DNA of 63,845 nucleotides, filler included, from Platydemus manokwari (lineage: Eukaryota), in assembly GCA_037951405.1 (NCBI GenBank). It is 6 parts of 6 records of this genome, joined end to end, with 100 filler letters (N's around TTAATTAATTAA, not from the genome) between each part and the next. Parts side by side here need not be neighbours in the genome. Positions count along the whole stretch, not along the records: positions 53,502 to 63,845 come from JBBMOY011142771.1; 5 more parts are not named here. One strand, written 5' to 3'. Numbering within the stretch: position 1 is the first letter of the stretch; each line of letters starts with the position of its first letter. The position numbers and the translations under genes were made by a program. The notes beneath the pieces are model-generated. The model worked only from the letters and a program-made list of their open reading frames with translations. It had not been told where the DNA came from and ran no database searches. This document shows positions 53,502 through 63,845 of the stretch, piece by piece.

Positions 53502-55080
53502 CCAATTTTCAAAATGTTCCATAATTAAAACAAATATGATGCGTATAAACAAATCAAACAATGTTGACTGATTTTGATGACTTATGAATAGAGCTTCAAA
53601 ATGACGTGTATGTTAATAATTTGCTACAGCACATCTGGTGTCAAATTCCGGTTATTAAGTTATAGACCCAATATTAAAAAATTTATCTTTCACTTATGAT
53701 GTCTCACTGAATAATATCGATTTTACTATAACAAAACAAATTTTACACCCGGTAAAAATCTATTGATTCTAAAATATCTGACAACAGTTAATTATTTGGT
53801 ATCCCAGACAAGAGTAATATATAAGTACTACGCAAAAAACTGAGGGGAATATCGCTACCAATTTCATTTAATCTTATTCCGATGATAGTGCACTTTACAA
53901 TGATATACCAAAAATATGACGATAAAAGTGTGGGTAAATTAGTAAATAAATTATTAATTCACTATATTATAAACTCTTGATTGATATGGGATAATTGCCA
54001 TCGAATGAGCCAATTCTATTGAGAAAAACTCTTTTTATCGATGTGCATTTGGGGAATATCATACATGGTTCTATAAATAATTGATATCTATGTTTTGATA
54101 TATACATACACACGCATATATCTCTCTATATATATGTAGCAATTAATAATCACCCGGTGTGTTAGGTTTGTTAGAAGCACACGTGTTTAATTGATGCTGA
54201 ATTATCCGACTAGAACCAAAATAATTTTTCAATATCGACTGAAATGTCAACAATTGATAATCACTGTCAAGAAAGGAGTAACATTTGGAATCAAAAATCA
54301 AGATCAAATACCTCACTTATTTGTAAAAAATAAGAATTTTTCATTCGATATATCCTAATCTATGACAACCGTTACTTAAGGTCTTTAAAACAAAAGTTTC
54401 CAGAGCACCCAGATAAGTTGAATATATAATTTTTTAAACCTTAAATACTTTTTAAAATGATTATTCATAAAATATCATGTACTGATACGAAATCTCAATG
54501 AAATGATTACCAATATCAATAAGATCTCATCCGATACTGGCACCAATTTTCTAAATATACTCCACACATTATACTACGATTTCAGATTTTAAATGCTAAT
54601 TGTTATTTTTTCTCTTTATTTTTTCCAAAAATATTTATCGTTGATTATATGATTCTATTTCTGTTGAAACTACTTCAATCAATTTATCCACAATCAATGG
54701 AATAGAAAAAAAACTCGAATACTGTTCAAAATACTAATCTTATATTATGATGATTGTAAGGAAAAGAACTTGTCGATTTAACTATTTGAAATAATTTGGT
54801 AAAGGGCCAATAAACATGTTTCGTAGGGCTTTCATAATCAAATACGAAATCGACCATTTAATAATTTTCTTACGAAACTCCACATCCATTCTGCCACTTG
54901 CTCATGGGCAAGCATTTATTTATATTCAATTTTATAGTGGCTTGAATTTCTTAGAGGTTAATAAATCAAATATCTTAGGAACCATTGAAATAATCATTAA
55001 TCTGGGTCCAATATTTATAGAAAAGCTTTCAGTTATAAGATTCATGTATGATTATTTCGAAACAAACCCATCAAAAATAC

Positions 55081-55215
55081 CTGGTTTAAATTCTGTTTCT
55101 TCATCCACCGATTGTTTCATAGATGTAATGTCGTGAAAAGTTAGTAACAATAGCAGAACTTCTTGTTTTTCATTCGTGATTGGATGGACTTGTAACACGA
55201 TCCAAATTGGCCCCC
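55081..55215 (-). CDS. eag: eag-family voltage-gated K+ channel, exon 3 (PAC: RGPIWIVLQVHPITNEKQEVLLLLLTFHDITSMKQSVDEETEFKP)
   Basis: Acceptor ttcag|, donor cag|gtattt; phase 1/1; matches Eag PxWLLLQVAPIRNE...FLLTFRDITALKQP. Confidence 0.93.
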
Positions 55216-55319
55216 CTGAAAATTATTGATTGATAAAAGGTATTTCAAAATTGATGTTCACAAATTAAAAGTTTCGATTTCTTCTTTTATTGAAAGTTGT
55301 CAATGAGGAGCAAACTAAC

Positions 55320-55550
55320 TATTTTTCTTGTAGACCAATAATTCACATTGAAAATATTCGTATTTATTCAAGGCCGAATACCATTGCTCCAAACATTCCT
55401 TGTTCGTTTCTTCACCATGAAGAAATGAACATCGACTGCTTTTCTGCATCACTTCCGTTCGAAGATATCCGGTCAGTTTGGAGAAAGCTTCATTGACATA
55501 GATGATGGGATGGTCGACAATTTTTGCATTTGCTAGAATGAAACTGCTAT
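55320..55550 (-). CDS. eag: eag-family K+ channel, exon 2 (PAS: SSFILANAKIVDHPIIYVNEAFSKLTGYLRTEVMQKSSRCSFLHGEETNKE...ELLVYKKN)
   Basis: Acceptor ttttccag|, donor |gttagt; 231 nt; matches Eag SSFLLANAQIVDFPIVYCNE...EVMQKS...LLYKKN. Confidence 0.95.
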
Positions 55551-56899
55551 CTGGAAAAGGTTAATTAATAATTTGGTAAATTTATAAATTAAAACTTTTG
55601 TTTGAAAGATTTATTACATTAAAATAAAAACATATGATAATTCCCGAAAAATTGTGCTGAAAATACCGGAATCAGCAGATGTGATTTTCATTATAATTTT
55701 TCATAATCAGGATACATCTTGATAAAACATTTTAAAATCATGTTATCGTTTGTGAATGACTTCTATTATTTTATTATTATAAAATTTTTATATAGTAATT
55801 GAAGTAGTTTTTATTCTTAATGAAGCACACTCGTGATCTTGGTGCAGCGTGGCTATACCATTGGTTTGATTTTTGCAGATGTTGGTTTGGAGATCCTGTC
55901 TGATAATCGAATAGTGGAAAGGAGTGCAAAACAAGTTGATCTGTGAACCCAAAACAGTAGATATTTTATAAAGATTTACAAAATTATCAATATGTGTGTT
56001 CTTGAAGGCTGAATCAGTATTTAAATATCAAAAACTTGTTTCATCAATAGCAGTTTGAATGTTTAAATCTGAGAATACAATAGAGAAGAGTCCAGAATGT
56101 AGGAATAAAGTTAAGATTGTAGATGGAGTGAAGTTATCAGCTACCCGTTTTTAATACCACTGTTAACATTAACTAGATAAAGATATCTTAAATTCATGTT
56201 TTACTGTGAGCAAATTGTGATTGGTGAATTCGATATTCTATTTTATATATTTGAAAAGAAAAGCCTGTCTCGAATTGAAATTGTTGTACTATTATAAAAA
56301 TATTATATCAGCTTTTCTTTCATTTCATTTGAAATGACAAGATTTGATGAAAATCACTTTTTAAAAATAATTATAAATCCAAACGTTGTTAACTCAATTT
56401 AAAATGTCAAAAGGTCGTTTAAACCAATCAGAATGAGTGTGTAATATTATCTTTATCTGAATGTTTACAATAGCTTTCTTTATTTATTAATAATAATTTA
56501 TAAATTCATTATTTCGATAGACTACCACACCACAAGTGTTTGTTAAATCTATACTTCAAATAGTTTATTATGCAGTGATGCTGGTTCATCCTGGTCATGT
56601 ATTGGTTTATGAAAAATCAGAGCACGAGCATAACACGACTCTTTTACAAATATTCAAAGTGTTTTAATCATCTGGTCATAAAGTTAATCAAAAAAGTGCT
56701 TATTTACCACCTAGCAATTAATTTTCTGGTGACTGATTATCACAAACGATATTCGATGAAAAGATCAAGAAAATCGAAAATGTGATCTAGCTTTGAATGA
56801 TACAGTTAAAGTCGTTTCTGGGTATTTTTAGGGGTTCATTGAAGGCTGTACAATGATTATTGCGTCTTTATATTCAATATTTTCATCGAAATATCAAAA

Positions 56900-58010: not shown

Positions 58011-61000
58011 CTTCTTTTCTTCCATATCATATACCTTAAGTCACTATCTATGTTGTGTCTTTCATTTGAAGTAACAAGCTCAAAGTACACTTATTGAATC
58101 CTCAGTCTGCCATTGTTTCCAAAGTTTGAATCAACTATGGCTTATTTGTTTTGTTGTAAATTTAAAATTTTAAGTTAAAGGAATGTAATTGAATAAAAGA
58201 TTGTTTGGGATTAAAAGTGTATTAAAGTATAAAAAATATAATATGAATAATTATAATATAAATTGCAGAAAACCATCAGCTCTGTTTCGAAATACCGGCA
58301 AATCTAAAGAAAATTAATTTTTGACAATTAAATTTCAAATCAATGCAAACATTAAAAGAGACAAAGAAAGTTTACAAGGTTGATTCCAATCATTGGCAGT
58401 AATAATTCAAAACATTTCATATTAATATCATAGATTAGATTAAAACATGATTTTTTGTAATAAAATTATAAAATAAATCTAATTGATAAGCAAATATAAA
58501 ACTATTAGTGAAAACTATTTATATTTCTACCGCAAATGATAGTTTATTCCGATTTATTGATAACTAGAAAAATGACAAAGCAAATTTTATAATAATTTAA
58601 ATCAAAACATATCAAACAACTGGTTGTTTTAACGTTTCAAGTATTTCAATTTCCATCTCAATATATTTTCAAATAATTAATGTTTCATTGTTGATTACTG
58701 GATGATTAGAACGTCAAAATGTCAATCATTGTTAGCAGATTGTGGTCTCTGTTAACAGAATGTTGATATCCCCCGATAATATTTATAGTTGGTCTGATAG
58801 TCGAACTTTCATTTGCTTATACATCATGACGAACATTGACAAATTATTGGTGCAAAAATTACGATTAAAACATTATAATCTATTTCTCATTTCACAAGGT
58901 GATTTGATCATATAATAGCCATGCGTATGAATGAACGCACAAAGACATTTCTTCAAATAACAGTTTGAATTGAACTTGAACCCCTCAATCAATAAATAAC
59001 ATATTGTGCGAAATACACTTTTTTACATATTAATTTATTGTTGTAAAAAAACTGAATGACGTGACAAGAAGATAAATAATATAAAAATATTTTAAAAAAT
59101 AAGAGTTTTTAAATTAAGTAGAGAATAAAAAATAATTGCAGTCAATGTGAACACCACTGAACCAATTCTATGTTTATTTTTAAAATATTATGTGAAAGTA
59201 CATTAAAAATAACAGAAAGATTTCATTTATTATGGCACGTTTTATGTATTTGGAAACTAATAGAATCTCACATTTTCAAACCGTCTTCATTCTTTATCTT
59301 CTCGAATATTATTGATCAATTCCATACTTTATTAATCTTATCTGGGAGATTAATTTGAGAATGTTTTTAAAGATGTTTGACACATTGATAGTTTCGAATC
59401 CCGTCACAATTATTTCTTCTTAACTTTGAAACAGTGTCATCATTATTTGGTTCCAATTCTTCGGAATCTTCTTTTTATTCTTATCTACTAGATCAGGTAA
59501 AAGTTGTTCACCAATTTTTGGATCAGCTTCAAAGTAGAGAGACATCTATCACGTTCAAGGGACTTGGCAGAATAATAAGAGATAGTGGTTGATTTCATAT
59601 CATTCATTGATTTTGAAATCCAAATACATTAACTGTTTTCCATCACTCTTCATGAGCACCGTTATTACTGAAATCCAAATTAATTAAACCATGTCTTCTA
59701 CTATTCCTTAAAGAATTCAACCTGGACTTGATCAGGAGGATGTGGTTCATTATAAGATTATACGACTCCCTGCTTTCATTGCATTGATTAATTTTTTAAA
59801 AAATCTTGAAACGTAGTGAACGTCATTCAAGACTTTGTATTCGAATAGTAAAAAACCGAAAGGTTTTCTACTTATAATTGTTTAAAACAAAGAGAATCAT
59901 CTGACTTACATGATATCAATAACTAAGTTTTCTTCTTACATATTAACATCCGAGAGCATAGCTATCAGATGTGTGTTCATGTTGACTAAAGTTCGTACTG
60001 AATAAGTAATAAGCACTACAACATAAACATTTTTGTAAAAATAATTATAAAAATTGTAGCGTTATTGTATGCTAATACTTGGCCTGACTTTTAAAACTAA
60101 CTTTATCGAAATTCTTTGATAATTACTTTGACATATGAACTAAAATGCTGTTATTTTAATGGAAATGACAACGCCACAAATTCACTTCAAAACAGAATGT
60201 TATTTCATTCCGTGGTTTGAGCAATTCTGTGTGCATAGTATTTATGTCCACTGGAATCGATGAAAAAGTAACTATAAATTTAGGAAACAAAATAGAAATA
60301 ATCAGAAGAAAATTAATCAACACGAGGAAACCCAAACACTCAGATGAATCAGTAAAACTATTAGTCAACAATAATTTCAAAATATCCACTTAGCTTTGAG
60401 GATAACTTTATTTATATTTATATAAAATCATCGCCCTCAATGGAGTTGATAAATATTATATAAATATCTTACACAAGATACTCGCTTAAACTTTCAAATA
60501 AAATTCACAACTCTACTTTATATTGAAACAGTAGGTCCCATTATCTCCGACGTTAGCTTTTCTACAATCATTCTTTAGAGCAAGTCACCTTGAACATTCA
60601 AAATTGACTTCAGCACACTTTGAATTTCAATACTGTTTATTGATCATTGTATTACTATCAATATCACCTCATCAATTTTATTGTTATAATAGTAATAAAA
60701 TTTTGTTTTCTTCACTTTTATTAGTCATTTATACAAGCAAACTAGAATTCTATTGGAATCAGATTATCGATACAAACAGCCATAATCTCGTTCTATAAAT
60801 TGCATTTGAATGAAATTTGAGACAAACAACACAAGTACAATTCCATCAATGTAATGGCCAAGGATTATCCATTAGAGTAGAAAAAATATTTTGTAAAAAG
60901 CAATTGATCTTCATTGTTTTTATTGTAGAAGAGAGAACTTTTAAATCAATATTTAAATTTGTATATTTCAGCAGTATGAAAAAAACCGAAAAAATTTCTA

Positions 61001-62297
61001 TATATATATATACCCGAAATAATTCACCAGTTTTCTCGATAATAAGAAATTCTAAACACAATTAGCTACACCCAAAGATAACTAATACCTGCAATACAAA
61101 AATAAGAAATAATCTAATATGTTTTCTATTTCTGAACTTTATACTTCTTGTAATTGCTTAAATTATTAAAAAAAATCATCTAATTTAAAATACAAAAATC
61201 TGAAGAAAATCAAGAAATTAAAAAATTAAATTAATTATAGAAATATTTCTCAGAATGATTGTTTTTTAAAGGAATTGCTTGAATATTATGAGTATTTGAA
61301 AATCCATTAATATTTAAATGATTATTTTAGATAGAAAATATATTGATATTAAGAAATATAAATTATCAATTTAATTCGCCTGAACATTTTGATTAAAAAT
61401 ATTTTTGTGGGTTAACGTGATTAGATTATTTTTAGTACTAGAAACTGTATGATAATTTATAATTTGCTTTAAATTTTAAACATTAATACCCAGGAATAAA
61501 ACCAAATGTTACACATAAATGTCAGAAAAACATGAACACTACAGAAAATCTAATAGGAAAATTCATGAAAATTGATAGAAATTGTCAAAATTCGACAAGA
61601 TTGCAAAATGGTGATAATACTTCGGAACAAGATGAAGAGATTTGTATTTTGCTAATCAATTAACAATGACAGATTATATTCACCGATGTTTATTATATCG
61701 TTGGTGGAAAAAGTCCTTTGTGTCTAGCCTATCTTTTGATCTCATTTCTAGCTAAGCATATTCAAGAATTGATGAAAATGTTTAATAAAACCTATCATTC
61801 ATTTTAAACAAACATCTGCTCTCTGCTATTTTTATTTATATCGAATTGTACATTTTAAATGTGATATTCAAGTAAAATATCGATTTTAAAATACAAAAAC
61901 ATTTATATTAGTTCAATACCATTACTCTGCTATGTGGTGATCAATATATTTTCATGGTCTTGAACATGACAGAACCTTGTTCTGAAATCTATATCTTCCC
62001 CCAGAATTATCAAGACACTTATTGTAATATAGAAAATTTGTTTTTCCAGCTCAGATTCGAATATGATCACAAAAATTTTCAAAATTGCACAAAAAATTAC
62101 TCAAAACTTTATAGTAGAAATACTACATGATATTCAACCAACCGAATATCGTCAAATTTTTATATTAAATTTCTCGACTTGTTGGGATAAAGTTTTGGGT
62201 TTGATAAACTTTTCGCCAAACTAATGACAACATAAATTCCGACGATCGATTATTTAACCGCTTATTTATTCGAAAAATCAAATAATAATTAACTAAC

Positions 62298-62376
62298 GTT
62301 GACTATTACATCGACGAATAATGGTATCTAAGAGAGTATTCTGAGGTGCCACGAGACCTCTTCTAGATCCGGACAT
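62298..62376 (-). CDS. eag: eag-family K+ channel, exon 1 (MSGSRRGLVAPQNTLLDTIIRRCNSQ)
   Basis: PAS-cap signature RRGLVAPQNT (Eag subfamily; Erg has GHVAPQNT, Elk GLLAPQNT); start context accATG; donor c|gttagt; 79 nt, in frame with exon 2. Confidence 0.95.
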
Positions 62377-63015
62377 GGTTGGGAAGATACTTAAAAATAA
62401 TAAATGTCACAATTAGGTTGAAATCCAATCATATTTATTCCATTGCGTTGTAAATGAGGAAAAAACAGGAAATTAATTGAAATGGATTTTTTGAGAAGAA
62501 TTTCTATTAATTATGCAACTCACTGCTCATTGGATGCATATTAAAATCATTTAATTATATTATTTGCTAAACAATTGATCCTGGCTTGTTTTATTTTATC
62601 CTCTCTAAGTATTGGTTTGAATTCTTTTTTGCTGGATTTTATATTTATTCAATGTCTATCGGAACGTTTTCTTTGGTGACCTATGTTAAAGAATAGAGCA
62701 CATATTTTCAAATATCTGTTGAAGAACTTTTGATAATTTTATTTTTATTAATTCTTTAATTAAAAAAAATGATGATTTTTTAATGAAAAAGTTATTTGCC
62801 CAACATTTTCCAGGATTGCACTAACCGGTTGATTTAAAATATATCTTAAAAAGGAAAATTTCAAGGTCAGTTGATAATCAATAAATAAAAAGAATCACAA
62901 AAACAGTCAATTAGGTGTTGTATAAATTTGAAAGCAATTGTAAGTAATATAGACCTTAAAACTCGGTAGCGGTTATTATAATCAACTTATAATCGATTTT
63001 ATCCATCGTTATCGG

Positions 63016-63526
63016 TATAAGCCGCAACTATTTTATAAAACGCGCATTGAAAACAAACCGAAAAGTCACGACATCAAAATATAATTTTATATAAAATCGG
63101 AATTAAATCTTTAAAATGTTATTAAATTAAAAATCTTCACATCCCGTTTTTCTTAAAATTTTTAATTTTCTTTGTATTCTCACTTGGCGTTGTATTGTAT
63201 ACTCTAAATATTAATCTACATGAAAATCTCTTTTTTTATTCTTTCTATCTTCTTTACATCTTCTTTATATCTTCTTTATGTATTCTCTATACTTTCTCAT
63301 CATCTTCATATTTCTTTTCCATAATTTTCAGTCTTCTTAGAATTGAATCCATGTGCGTGATCGCCATATAAGGCACTACTATTTTATAATTAGCGCATTG
63401 AAAACAAACTGAAAAGTCACGACACAAAATTATGTTTGTAAATAAAATTAGAGAAACAAAATATATCATTTTATATAAAATTTGAATTAAATATCTAAAA
63501 TATTTTTTCGATTACAAATTTTCATA
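63016..63526 (-). mobile_element. TRIM-like non-autonomous LTR element, full copy with perfect TSD
   Basis: 5' LTR 63367-63526; PBS TGGCGATCACGCAC 63353-63366; PPT-like aagaaaaacggga ~63142-63154; 3' LTR 63016-63141 starting TGTGA; identical ATCGG at 63011-63015 and 63527-63531. Confidence 0.88.
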
Positions 63527-63845
63527 ATCGGGAAAATTAAATACAATGGAATCTCGTTCCTGATCGTTCGACATCATTTTAAATTAATCAGAGATTTTAT
63601 AAAATTAACTGAGCTTAAATATTAAATATAATCATATATAATCATTTTTATTTATAATAAATAATAATAATAATTTTATTATTATAAGCATAATAGATTA
63701 TTTTATATTAAAATTATGATAAAATATAACTAAAATTATATAAACATAATTTTTATAAAATGGTTTAAAAATATTAGGTTGTAAATAAAGTTCGCGGACA
63801 AAATTGTAAATAAAAATTTGCCATCACGTTTTGCCATCGATTTAT

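What the first reader, a model, noticed from the sequence alone, without database searches (positions are those of the whole stretch)
63011..63531. 511-bp miniature LTR retroelement (TRIM) with a perfect 5-bp target-site duplication
Seen on the - strand: a 160-bp LTR, then TGGCGATCACGCAC directly after the LTR end, a 225-bp GA-rich internal region with no RT or integrase, a purine tract, and a second 126-bp LTR. The whole unit is bracketed by ATCGG...ATCGG. Established: LTR-PBS-internal-PPT-LTR plus a short TSD is the definition of a TRIM, and a TRIM has been reported as highly expressed in tapeworm (Echinococcus) stem cells. Inference: this is a non-autonomous family mobilised by a Gypsy-type partner. 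I do not recognise it as described for free-living flatworms.
Basis: partly seen in the sequence, partly recalled or inferred. Interest (0 to 1): 0.82.

Follow-up and report, generated by a model that had tools for sequence, protein, structure and literature searches.

The report
Old miniature LTR retrotransposon (TRIM) copy
This is a real but decayed 511-bp copy of a small non-coding LTR retrotransposon (a TRIM) from a family repeated hundreds to thousands of times in an AT-rich animal genome, which is an ordinary kind of mobile element and not a new one.

Summary
These are a 160-nt and a 126-nt direct repeat, TGGCGATCACGCAC directly after the first repeat, a 225-nt purine-rich non-coding core, a purine tract directly before the second repeat, and CCGAT on both sides.

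The repeats are 85% identical over 126 aligned bases and differ by one indel of about 33 nt. Contigs of the one public run that holds the locus show single-copy depth (about 12-20) on both flanks and depth of hundreds to tens of thousands across exactly 63016-63526. About 146 matching contigs diverge into unrelated sequence at the outer LTR end. The majority letters of other copies give canonical TG...CA LTR ends and an unbroken purine tract.

The element has no Pfam domain and no tRNA, 5S or hammerhead signal. Its PBS resembles the 3' end of tRNA-Arg(UCG), matching 10 of the last 11 nt of the human tRNA. The host's own tRNAs could not be checked.

The TRIM reading is well supported. A Gypsy partner, a flatworm host, expression and novelty could not be tested. 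TRIMs are already known in ants, tapeworms, bivalves and other phyla, so this is a new member of a known kind and of low to moderate interest.

The parts
63527..63531 (-). Upstream target-site duplication, CCGAT (ATCGG on the + strand)
   Evidence: It is identical to 63011-63015 and lies directly outside the point where LTR homology ends.
63367..63526 (-). 5' LTR, 160 nt, TATGAAA...CTTATA. It carries the ~33-nt segment missing from the 3' LTR.
   Evidence: Alignment (85% identity to the 3' LTR). Summed depth is 900-47,000 against about 15 in the next bin, 63524-63635.
63353..63366 (-). Primer-binding-site-like motif TGGCGATCACGCAC, with no spacer after the LTR end
   Evidence: The last 11 nt of its complement match 10 of 11 nt of the human tRNA-Arg(UCG) 3' end, as printed in bioRxiv 10.1101/2021.02.06.430044. 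Host tRNAs were not available.
63155..63352 (-). Non-coding, A/G-rich internal domain with an 11-nt tandem repeat (63229-63291) whose unit number varies among family copies
   Evidence: No Pfam hit to the ORFs across it. Summed depth is about 330-6,800 throughout, never single copy. 'Goes back' joints fall within the tandem repeat.
63142..63154 (-). Polypurine tract AAGAAAAACGGGA, directly upstream of the 3' LTR
   Evidence: At 63146 most of the depth in other copies reads the complement of G instead of C, which makes the tract all purine (table 3).
63016..63141 (-). 3' LTR, 126 nt, TGTGAAG...CTTATA, with a ~33-nt deletion relative to the 5' LTR and to most family copies
   Evidence: About 146 contigs diverge into unlike sequence before 63018, and 124 contigs carry extra letters at the deletion point 63078 (table 7).
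63011..63015 (-). Downstream target-site duplication, CCGAT
   Evidence: Contig record 4 (61347-63055, one difference) bridges this junction in the public run.

Best explanation
This is one old, degenerate insertion of a TRIM-type non-autonomous LTR retrotransposon, part of a high-copy interspersed family in an AT-rich animal genome.

The mechanism is inferred from the known LTR-retrotransposon cycle. An element RNA made from the 5' LTR is packaged by the Gag, RT and integrase of an unidentified autonomous LTR element. A host tRNA, probably of the tRNA-Arg type, primes minus-strand synthesis at the PBS abutting the 5' LTR. The polypurine tract abutting the 3' LTR primes the plus strand. Integrase then inserts the cDNA at a 5-bp staggered cut, leaving CCGAT on both sides.

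Shown here: the anatomy, the absence of coding capacity, the repetitiveness of the family, and the coincidence of the family's limits with the LTR outer ends.

Inferred: the primer tRNA, the partner element and transcription.

This copy looks inactive. Its LTRs have diverged by 15%, the 3' LTR has lost about 33 nt, and its LTR termini differ from the family majority.
For: 1. Two direct repeats of 160 and 126 nt match at 107 of 126 positions, and their homology stops sharply at both outer ends.
2. A TGG-initial 14-mer lies directly after the 5' LTR. It is complementary to a tRNA-Arg(UCG)-like 3' end at 10 of 11 positions against the human tRNA.
3. A 13-nt tract with 12 purines lies directly before the 3' LTR. 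The majority letter of other copies at 63146 makes it all purine.
4. A perfect 5-bp duplication of a GC-rich 5-mer flanks the unit in a 27% GC piece. The chance of this is about 0.3-0.5%, or 0.06% for that specific word.
5. No Pfam domain is found in the ORFs across the element.
6. In the public run the flanks are at depth 12-20. The bins covering 63016-63523 sum to 6,600-13,700, and the next bin outward on each side is back at 15-16.
7. About 146 contigs diverge into mutually unlike sequence (agreement 0.48) just outside the LTR end at 63018. This is what insertions at many different sites would give.
8. The loose-end consensus strings show the family majority with TG at the LTR start and CA at the LTR end.
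9. The LTR core is 10-20 times deeper than the internal domain, as expected if solo LTRs or LTR-sharing relatives exist. A tandem satellite would not give this ratio.
10. This locus has no tandem arrangement.
Against: - No second full copy could be read, so TSD length, fixed boundaries and the short form as the unit of amplification are shown only indirectly.
- The summed contig depths are explicitly not copy numbers.
- This copy has TA instead of CA at both LTR 3' ends and TA instead of TG at the 5' LTR start.
- PBS complementarity was tested only against a human tRNA sequence from a paper, not against the host's tRNAs.
- No autonomous partner and no transcript were seen.
- The only run holding the locus may be the sample the assembly came from, so it is not independent confirmation of the insertion.
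Confidence: 0.8

Rival explanations
1. This is a one-off internally deleted remnant of a larger, once autonomous LTR retrotransposon, not a member of an amplified miniature family. The PBS-proximal and PPT-proximal parts would be repeated only because the full-length element is repeated.
For: Depth along the internal domain is uneven. It is about 1,700 near the PBS but 330-700 near the PPT. No contig was shown to span the whole 225-nt core in another copy (table 8).
Against: Every part of the internal domain is at least 25 times the flank depth. None of the six loose-end piles that one search printed (of 680) lies between the PBS and the PPT. Variants in the number of 11-nt repeat units among contigs show that the middle of the core is itself repeated. 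The two readings differ only in which form was amplified, because TRIMs are themselves deletion derivatives.
Confidence: 0.1
2. Two independent insertions of a short interspersed repeat, either SINE-like or solo LTRs, landed in the same orientation about 225 bp apart. The flanking 5-mer match would then be chance.
For: The conserved LTR core is far more abundant than the internal domain, with depth 20,000-47,000 against 330-2,400.
Against: The DNA between the repeats is itself repeated at least 25-fold, while the outer flanks are single copy. Contigs from other copies join internal sequence to an LTR (joints 63330>63027 and 63333>63032). The TGG motif and the purine tract sit exactly at the two inner LTR edges. 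The 5-mer match has a chance of about 0.3-0.5%. Rfam finds no tRNA, 5S or 7SL signal.
Confidence: 0.05
3. This is a local tandem duplication or a satellite monomer pair with no mobility.
For: Two direct repeats lie 351-384 bp apart. TRIMs and satellites are sometimes related (PMC6934838).
Against: There are only two repeats and no array at the locus. The flanks are single copy, and contigs from other copies run into unlike flanks at the LTR end. The LTR-to-core depth ratio is far from 1:1.
Confidence: 0.03

Closest known systems
Plant TRIMs as originally defined (terminal direct repeats of 100-250 bp, total under 1 kb, PBS, PPT; definition as given in PMC6934838 and PMC4717578)
   Same: LTRs of 160 and 126 nt, a total of 511 bp, a PBS-like motif abutting the 5' LTR, a PPT abutting the 3' LTR, no ORF and a 5-bp TSD.
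   Different: The host is an animal. The PBS resembles tRNA-Arg, not the tRNA-Met typical of plant TRIMs (the plant tRNA-Met point is from my own knowledge). No sequence relationship was tested.
ta-TRIM of taeniid tapeworms (Koziol et al. 2015, PMC4558846)
   Same: It is an animal TRIM with two short LTRs, TG...CA ends in the family, a PBS, a PPT, a non-coding core, solo LTRs and many copies.
   Different: ta-TRIM has LTRs of about 198 bp and a core of about 590 bp. Its PBS is complementary to tRNA-Leu and sits 4 nt from the LTR, its PPT sits 3 nt from the LTR, and its TSDs are mostly 4 bp. Here the core is 225 nt, the PBS and PPT abut the LTRs, the PBS is Arg-like and the TSD is 5 bp. Stem-cell expression is unknown here.
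PbTRIM of the harvester ant (PMC3532108) and biv-TRIM of bivalves (PMC6934838)
   Same: They are small non-autonomous LTR elements in animals with no identified autonomous partner.
   Different: biv-TRIM lacks a recognisable PBS, whereas this element has a canonical TGG-initial one. No sequence similarity was tested.
TRIMp3 elements: Cassandra, Helenus and Ajax (PMC10886601)
   Same: They share the TRIM architecture. Ajax, Cassandra and fungal and plant Helenus make 5-bp TSDs.
   Different: Their LTRs carry a 5S rRNA- or tRNA-derived Pol III promoter. An Rfam scan of this element at E<=10 found no tRNA or 5S match.

Membership tests
TRIM (terminal-repeat retrotransposon in miniature) | Two terminal direct repeats of about 100-250 bp | tested here: met
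   The repeats are 160 and 126 nt and 85% identical over 126 aligned positions.
TRIM (terminal-repeat retrotransposon in miniature) | Total length under about 1 kb with no gag or pol coding capacity | tested here: met
   The unit is 511 bp. The two longest stop-to-stop ORFs across it give no Pfam hit at E<=0.01.
TRIM (terminal-repeat retrotransposon in miniature) | PBS just downstream of the 5' LTR, complementary to a host tRNA 3' end | tested here: inconclusive
   TGGCGATCACGCAC abuts the LTR. It matches 10 of 11 positions of the human tRNA-Arg(UCG) 3' end taken from a paper. No tRNA gene lies in the piece, and the host's tRNA set was not available.
TRIM (terminal-repeat retrotransposon in miniature) | Polypurine tract just upstream of the 3' LTR | tested here: met
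   AAGAAAAACGGGA abuts the LTR start. The majority letter in other copies removes the single C.
TRIM (terminal-repeat retrotransposon in miniature) | Short target-site duplication flanking the whole unit | tested here: met
   CCGAT lies on both sides of this copy, with a chance of about 0.3-0.5%. TSDs of other copies could not be read.
TRIM (terminal-repeat retrotransposon in miniature) | LTR ends 5'-TG...CA-3' | tested here: inconclusive
   In this copy the 3' LTR reads TG...TA and the 5' LTR reads TA...TA. The loose-end consensus strings of other copies show TG at the start and CA at the end (table 7, at 63116, 63018 and 63396).
TRIM (terminal-repeat retrotransposon in miniature) | Interspersed multi-copy family whose limits are the LTR outer ends | tested here: met
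   Flank depth is 12-20 against 6,600-13,700 in the element bins. About 146 contigs diverge at 63018, and depth returns to 14.8 from 63524. This rests on contig summaries only, with no full second copy.
TRIMp3 (Cassandra / Helenus / Ajax) | 5S rRNA- or tRNA-derived sequence inside the LTR | tested here: not met
   An Rfam scan of 62950-63600 at E<=10 gave only three chance-level hits, none to tRNA or 5S. ARAGORN found nothing.
Retrozyme | Hammerhead ribozyme in the terminal repeats | tested here: not met
   There is no hammerhead match at E<=10.
ta-TRIM (taeniid family) | About 198-bp LTRs, a tRNA-Leu PBS 4 nt from the LTR, and mostly 4-bp TSDs (PMC4558846) | tested here: not met
   Here the LTRs are 160 and 126 nt, the PBS is Arg-like and abuts the LTR, and the TSD is 5 bp. 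Sequence homology was not tested.

The most novel reading that the evidence does not exclude
The host is indeed a free-living flatworm. This would then be an undescribed, very abundant TRIM family, with thousands of LTR equivalents, that is transcribed in pluripotent stem cells in the way ta-TRIM is in Echinococcus. It would offer a stem-cell marker and a test case for PIWI/piRNA control of non-autonomous LTR elements.
Probability: 0.08. Interest if true: 0.5.

Novelty: new member of a known kind. Interest (0 to 1): 0.25.

Why it matters
The main value is for annotation. A non-coding family of about 0.5 kb, whose summed contig depth suggests hundreds to thousands of copies, is easily missed or misclassed by protein-based TE pipelines. 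It can seed false LTR-pair calls, and it marks the past activity of an autonomous LTR element with a 5-bp integrase footprint.

This copy lies in the same orientation as a KCNH1/EAG-type potassium-channel gene and about 7.5 kb upstream of its PAS exon. Nothing suggests an effect on that gene. The element would become more interesting only if the family proved to be transcribed in a cell-type-specific way, as in tapeworms.

Tried and rejected
- **Other copies in public collections.** An exact-pattern scan for the conserved 26-nt LTR core found nothing in metagenome contigs or genome contigs. The host is not in those collections, so no second copy could be fetched.
- **Other copies in the piece.** A sensitive blastn of the LTRs and the core against the 10.3-kb piece found only the two LTRs.
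- **Expression.** Both run searches returned one DNA-type run and no RNA run, so expression is untested.
- **Host identity.** A word search with the 81-aa PAS exon found no candidate, probably because of the length filter. Four exact ORF look-ups were not on record. I therefore did not spend a second word search on spurious element ORFs, or the big representative search, on a side question.
- **Small-RNA-derived LTR or retrozyme.** Rejected by Rfam and ARAGORN.
- **Satellite or tandem duplication.** Rejected.
- **Literature string search for the PBS.** No paper holds this exact PBS as a PBS. The search served only to confirm the human tRNA-Arg(UCG) 3' end.
- **Planarian genome paper.** PMC11410931 does not mention TRIM elements. 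This says nothing either way, because the host is unknown.

Full report
**Observation.** Read on the minus strand, the stretch 63531-63011 contains the following:
- CCGAT.
- A 160-nt repeat at 63526-63367, running TATGAAA...CTTATA.
- TGGCGATCACGCAC at 63366-63353, with no spacer.
- A purine-rich stretch. The 225 nt between the repeats are 51% A and 20% G.
- AAGAAAAACGGGA at 63154-63142.
- A 126-nt repeat at 63141-63016, running TGTGAAG...CTTATA.
- CCGAT again.

The two repeats align at 107 of 126 positions (85%, K2P 0.17). They differ by one indel of about 33 nt, missing from the downstream repeat, plus two 1-nt gaps. Homology stops sharply at CTTATA in both repeats and starts at T(A/G)TGAA, so the boundaries are defined independently of the flanking 5-mers.

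In this 27% GC piece, two 5-mers at such a spacing agree by chance in 0.3-0.5% of positions. ATCGG itself occupies 0.06% of positions. The internal region holds an 11-nt tandem repeat at 63229-63291.

**Coding and RNA content.** The longest stop-to-stop ORFs across the element, 74 and 81 aa, give no Pfam hit. Rfam finds nothing at gathering thresholds in the whole piece. At E<=10 on the element it finds only three chance-level matches, none to tRNA, 5S or hammerhead. ARAGORN finds no tRNA. The element is therefore non-coding, and it is not a Cassandra, Helenus or Ajax element or a retrozyme.

**Family evidence.** Only one public run holds the locus. It shares 0.42 of the sampled words with the flanks included and 0.19 for the element alone. 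I laid its contigs on 60500-63845 at 80% likeness or better.
- Unique flanks sit at summed depth 12-23.
- The five bins covering 62964-63523 sit at 6,600-13,700.
- The bins just outside sit at 15.9 (62852-62963) and 14.8 (63524-63635).

The repeated DNA therefore ends within a few bases of the two LTR outer ends.

Per-position depths show three levels. The LTR core (around 63042-63059 and 63406-63426) is at about 17,800-47,000. The upstream, U3-like part of the LTR is at about 900-2,500. The internal domain is at about 330-2,400, rising to about 6,500 in the tandem repeat. The tool warns that these sums are not copy numbers. Even so, they lie two to three orders of magnitude above the flanks, and the LTR core is 10-20 times deeper than the internal domain. 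That ratio fits solo LTRs or relatives that share the LTR. It does not fit a 1:1 satellite.

About 146 contigs carry loose ends before 63018, with only 0.48 agreement among them, so they run into different flanks. The loose-end strings at 63018 and 63396 end or begin with TG where this copy has TA. On the element strand, the family majority therefore ends its LTR in CA. The string at 63116 runs through ...CACA, so on the element strand the LTR begins TGTG.

At 63146 most of the depth reads C instead of G on the plus strand. This turns the single C of the purine tract into a G and makes the tract uninterrupted in most copies. At 63078, 124 contigs carry extra letters, so the 126-nt LTR is the deleted form.

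Joints such as 63330>63027 show internal sequence followed by an LTR in other copies. 'Goes back' joints inside 63240-63279 show that the number of 11-nt units varies between copies.

Contig records 4 (61347-63055, one difference) and 8 (63404-63793, no difference) bridge both insertion junctions, so no empty site was seen. This run may be the sample the assembly came from.

**Primer.** The complement of the motif after the 5' LTR ends in ...CGTGATCGCCA. The human tRNA-Arg(UCG) printed in bioRxiv 10.1101/2021.02.06.430044 ends in ...cgtggtcgcca, which is 10 of 11 matches. The single difference lies in the acceptor stem. Whether the host's tRNA-Arg carries it could not be tested, so the primer assignment is a lead and not a result.

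**Host.** Two minus-strand exons, at 55318-55560 and 55055-55222, encode a PAS domain. The first matches the PAS domain of KCNH1 (EAG) potassium channels at E = 3.5e-22. The piece therefore comes from an animal.

Attempts to name the organism failed, and the run's organism is coded.

**Mechanism.** This part is inferred from the established LTR-retrotransposon cycle, as summarised in PMC4558846:
- Transcription starts in the 5' LTR.
- The RNA is packaged by a partner element's Gag.
- A tRNA primes minus-strand synthesis at the PBS.
- The PPT primes the plus strand.
- Integrase makes a 5-bp staggered cut.

The 15% LTR divergence, the 33-nt loss in one LTR and the non-majority termini mark this copy as old and probably immobile. 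No partner was identified. A 5-bp TSD does not point specifically to Gypsy, because in PMC10886601 the Gypsy-linked animal Helenus make 4-bp TSDs and the Copia-linked ones make 5 bp.

**Comparison and novelty.** The element meets the structural definition of a TRIM: repeats of 100-250 bp, under 1 kb in total, a PBS and a PPT (PMC6934838). The tRNA match and the TG...CA ends are only partly shown.

It differs from ta-TRIM, which has LTRs of about 198 bp, a core of about 590 bp, a tRNA-Leu PBS offset by 4 nt and 4-bp TSDs (PMC4558846). Animal TRIMs are already reported from ants (PMC3532108), taeniids, bivalves (PMC6934838), and, for the tRNA-bearing group Helenus alone, six animal phyla (PMC10886601).

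This is a new member of a known kind. I scored its interest at 0.25.

**Rivals:**
- A one-off deletion derivative of a larger element (0.10).
- Two independent insertions of a short repeat (0.05).
- A local duplication or satellite (0.03).

Each is weakened by the repeated internal domain, the single-copy outer flanks, the exact placement of the PBS and PPT at the inner LTR edges, and the 5-bp duplication.

Noticed in passing
window 55318-55560 and 55055-55222, minus strand: Two exons encode the PAS domain of a KCNH1/EAG-type voltage-gated potassium channel (Pfam PAS_9 at 1.3e-08; PDB KCNH1 PAS at 3.5e-22). The TRIM lies about 7.5 kb upstream in the same orientation, either in an upstream intron or in intergenic DNA.
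   Followed up: partly
window 63748-63845 (the edge of the piece): The last ~98 bases have a summed contig depth of about 248,600, against about 15 for unique DNA. The piece ends in an extremely abundant repeat that contains GATGGCAAA and TTGTAAATAAA motifs. It has weak similarity to the ~33-nt variable segment of the TRIM LTR (78% over 37 nt, E = 0.03).
   Followed up: partly
window 61284-61395: A segment of about 110 bp has a summed contig depth of about 5,100, with matches in more than 100 contigs. This looks like a second short interspersed repeat in otherwise single-copy DNA. I saw no obvious terminal repeats on a quick read.
   Followed up: no
window 63229-63291 (inside the element): An 11-nt tandem repeat (GATATAAAGAA-like on the element strand, 4.8 units) has a unit number that differs among family copies, judging by the 'goes back' joints and inserted letters.
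   Followed up: partly
window 63620-63727: An AT-only imperfect tandem array (period about 29, 3.9 copies, 69% matches) lies between the TRIM and the hyper-abundant edge repeat.
   Followed up: no
window 63016-63017 and 63367-63368: Both LTRs of this copy share the same departure from the family majority at the LTR end: TA instead of CA on the element strand. A shared departure suggests it was inherited from the source copy or subfamily, not acquired twice.
   Followed up: partly
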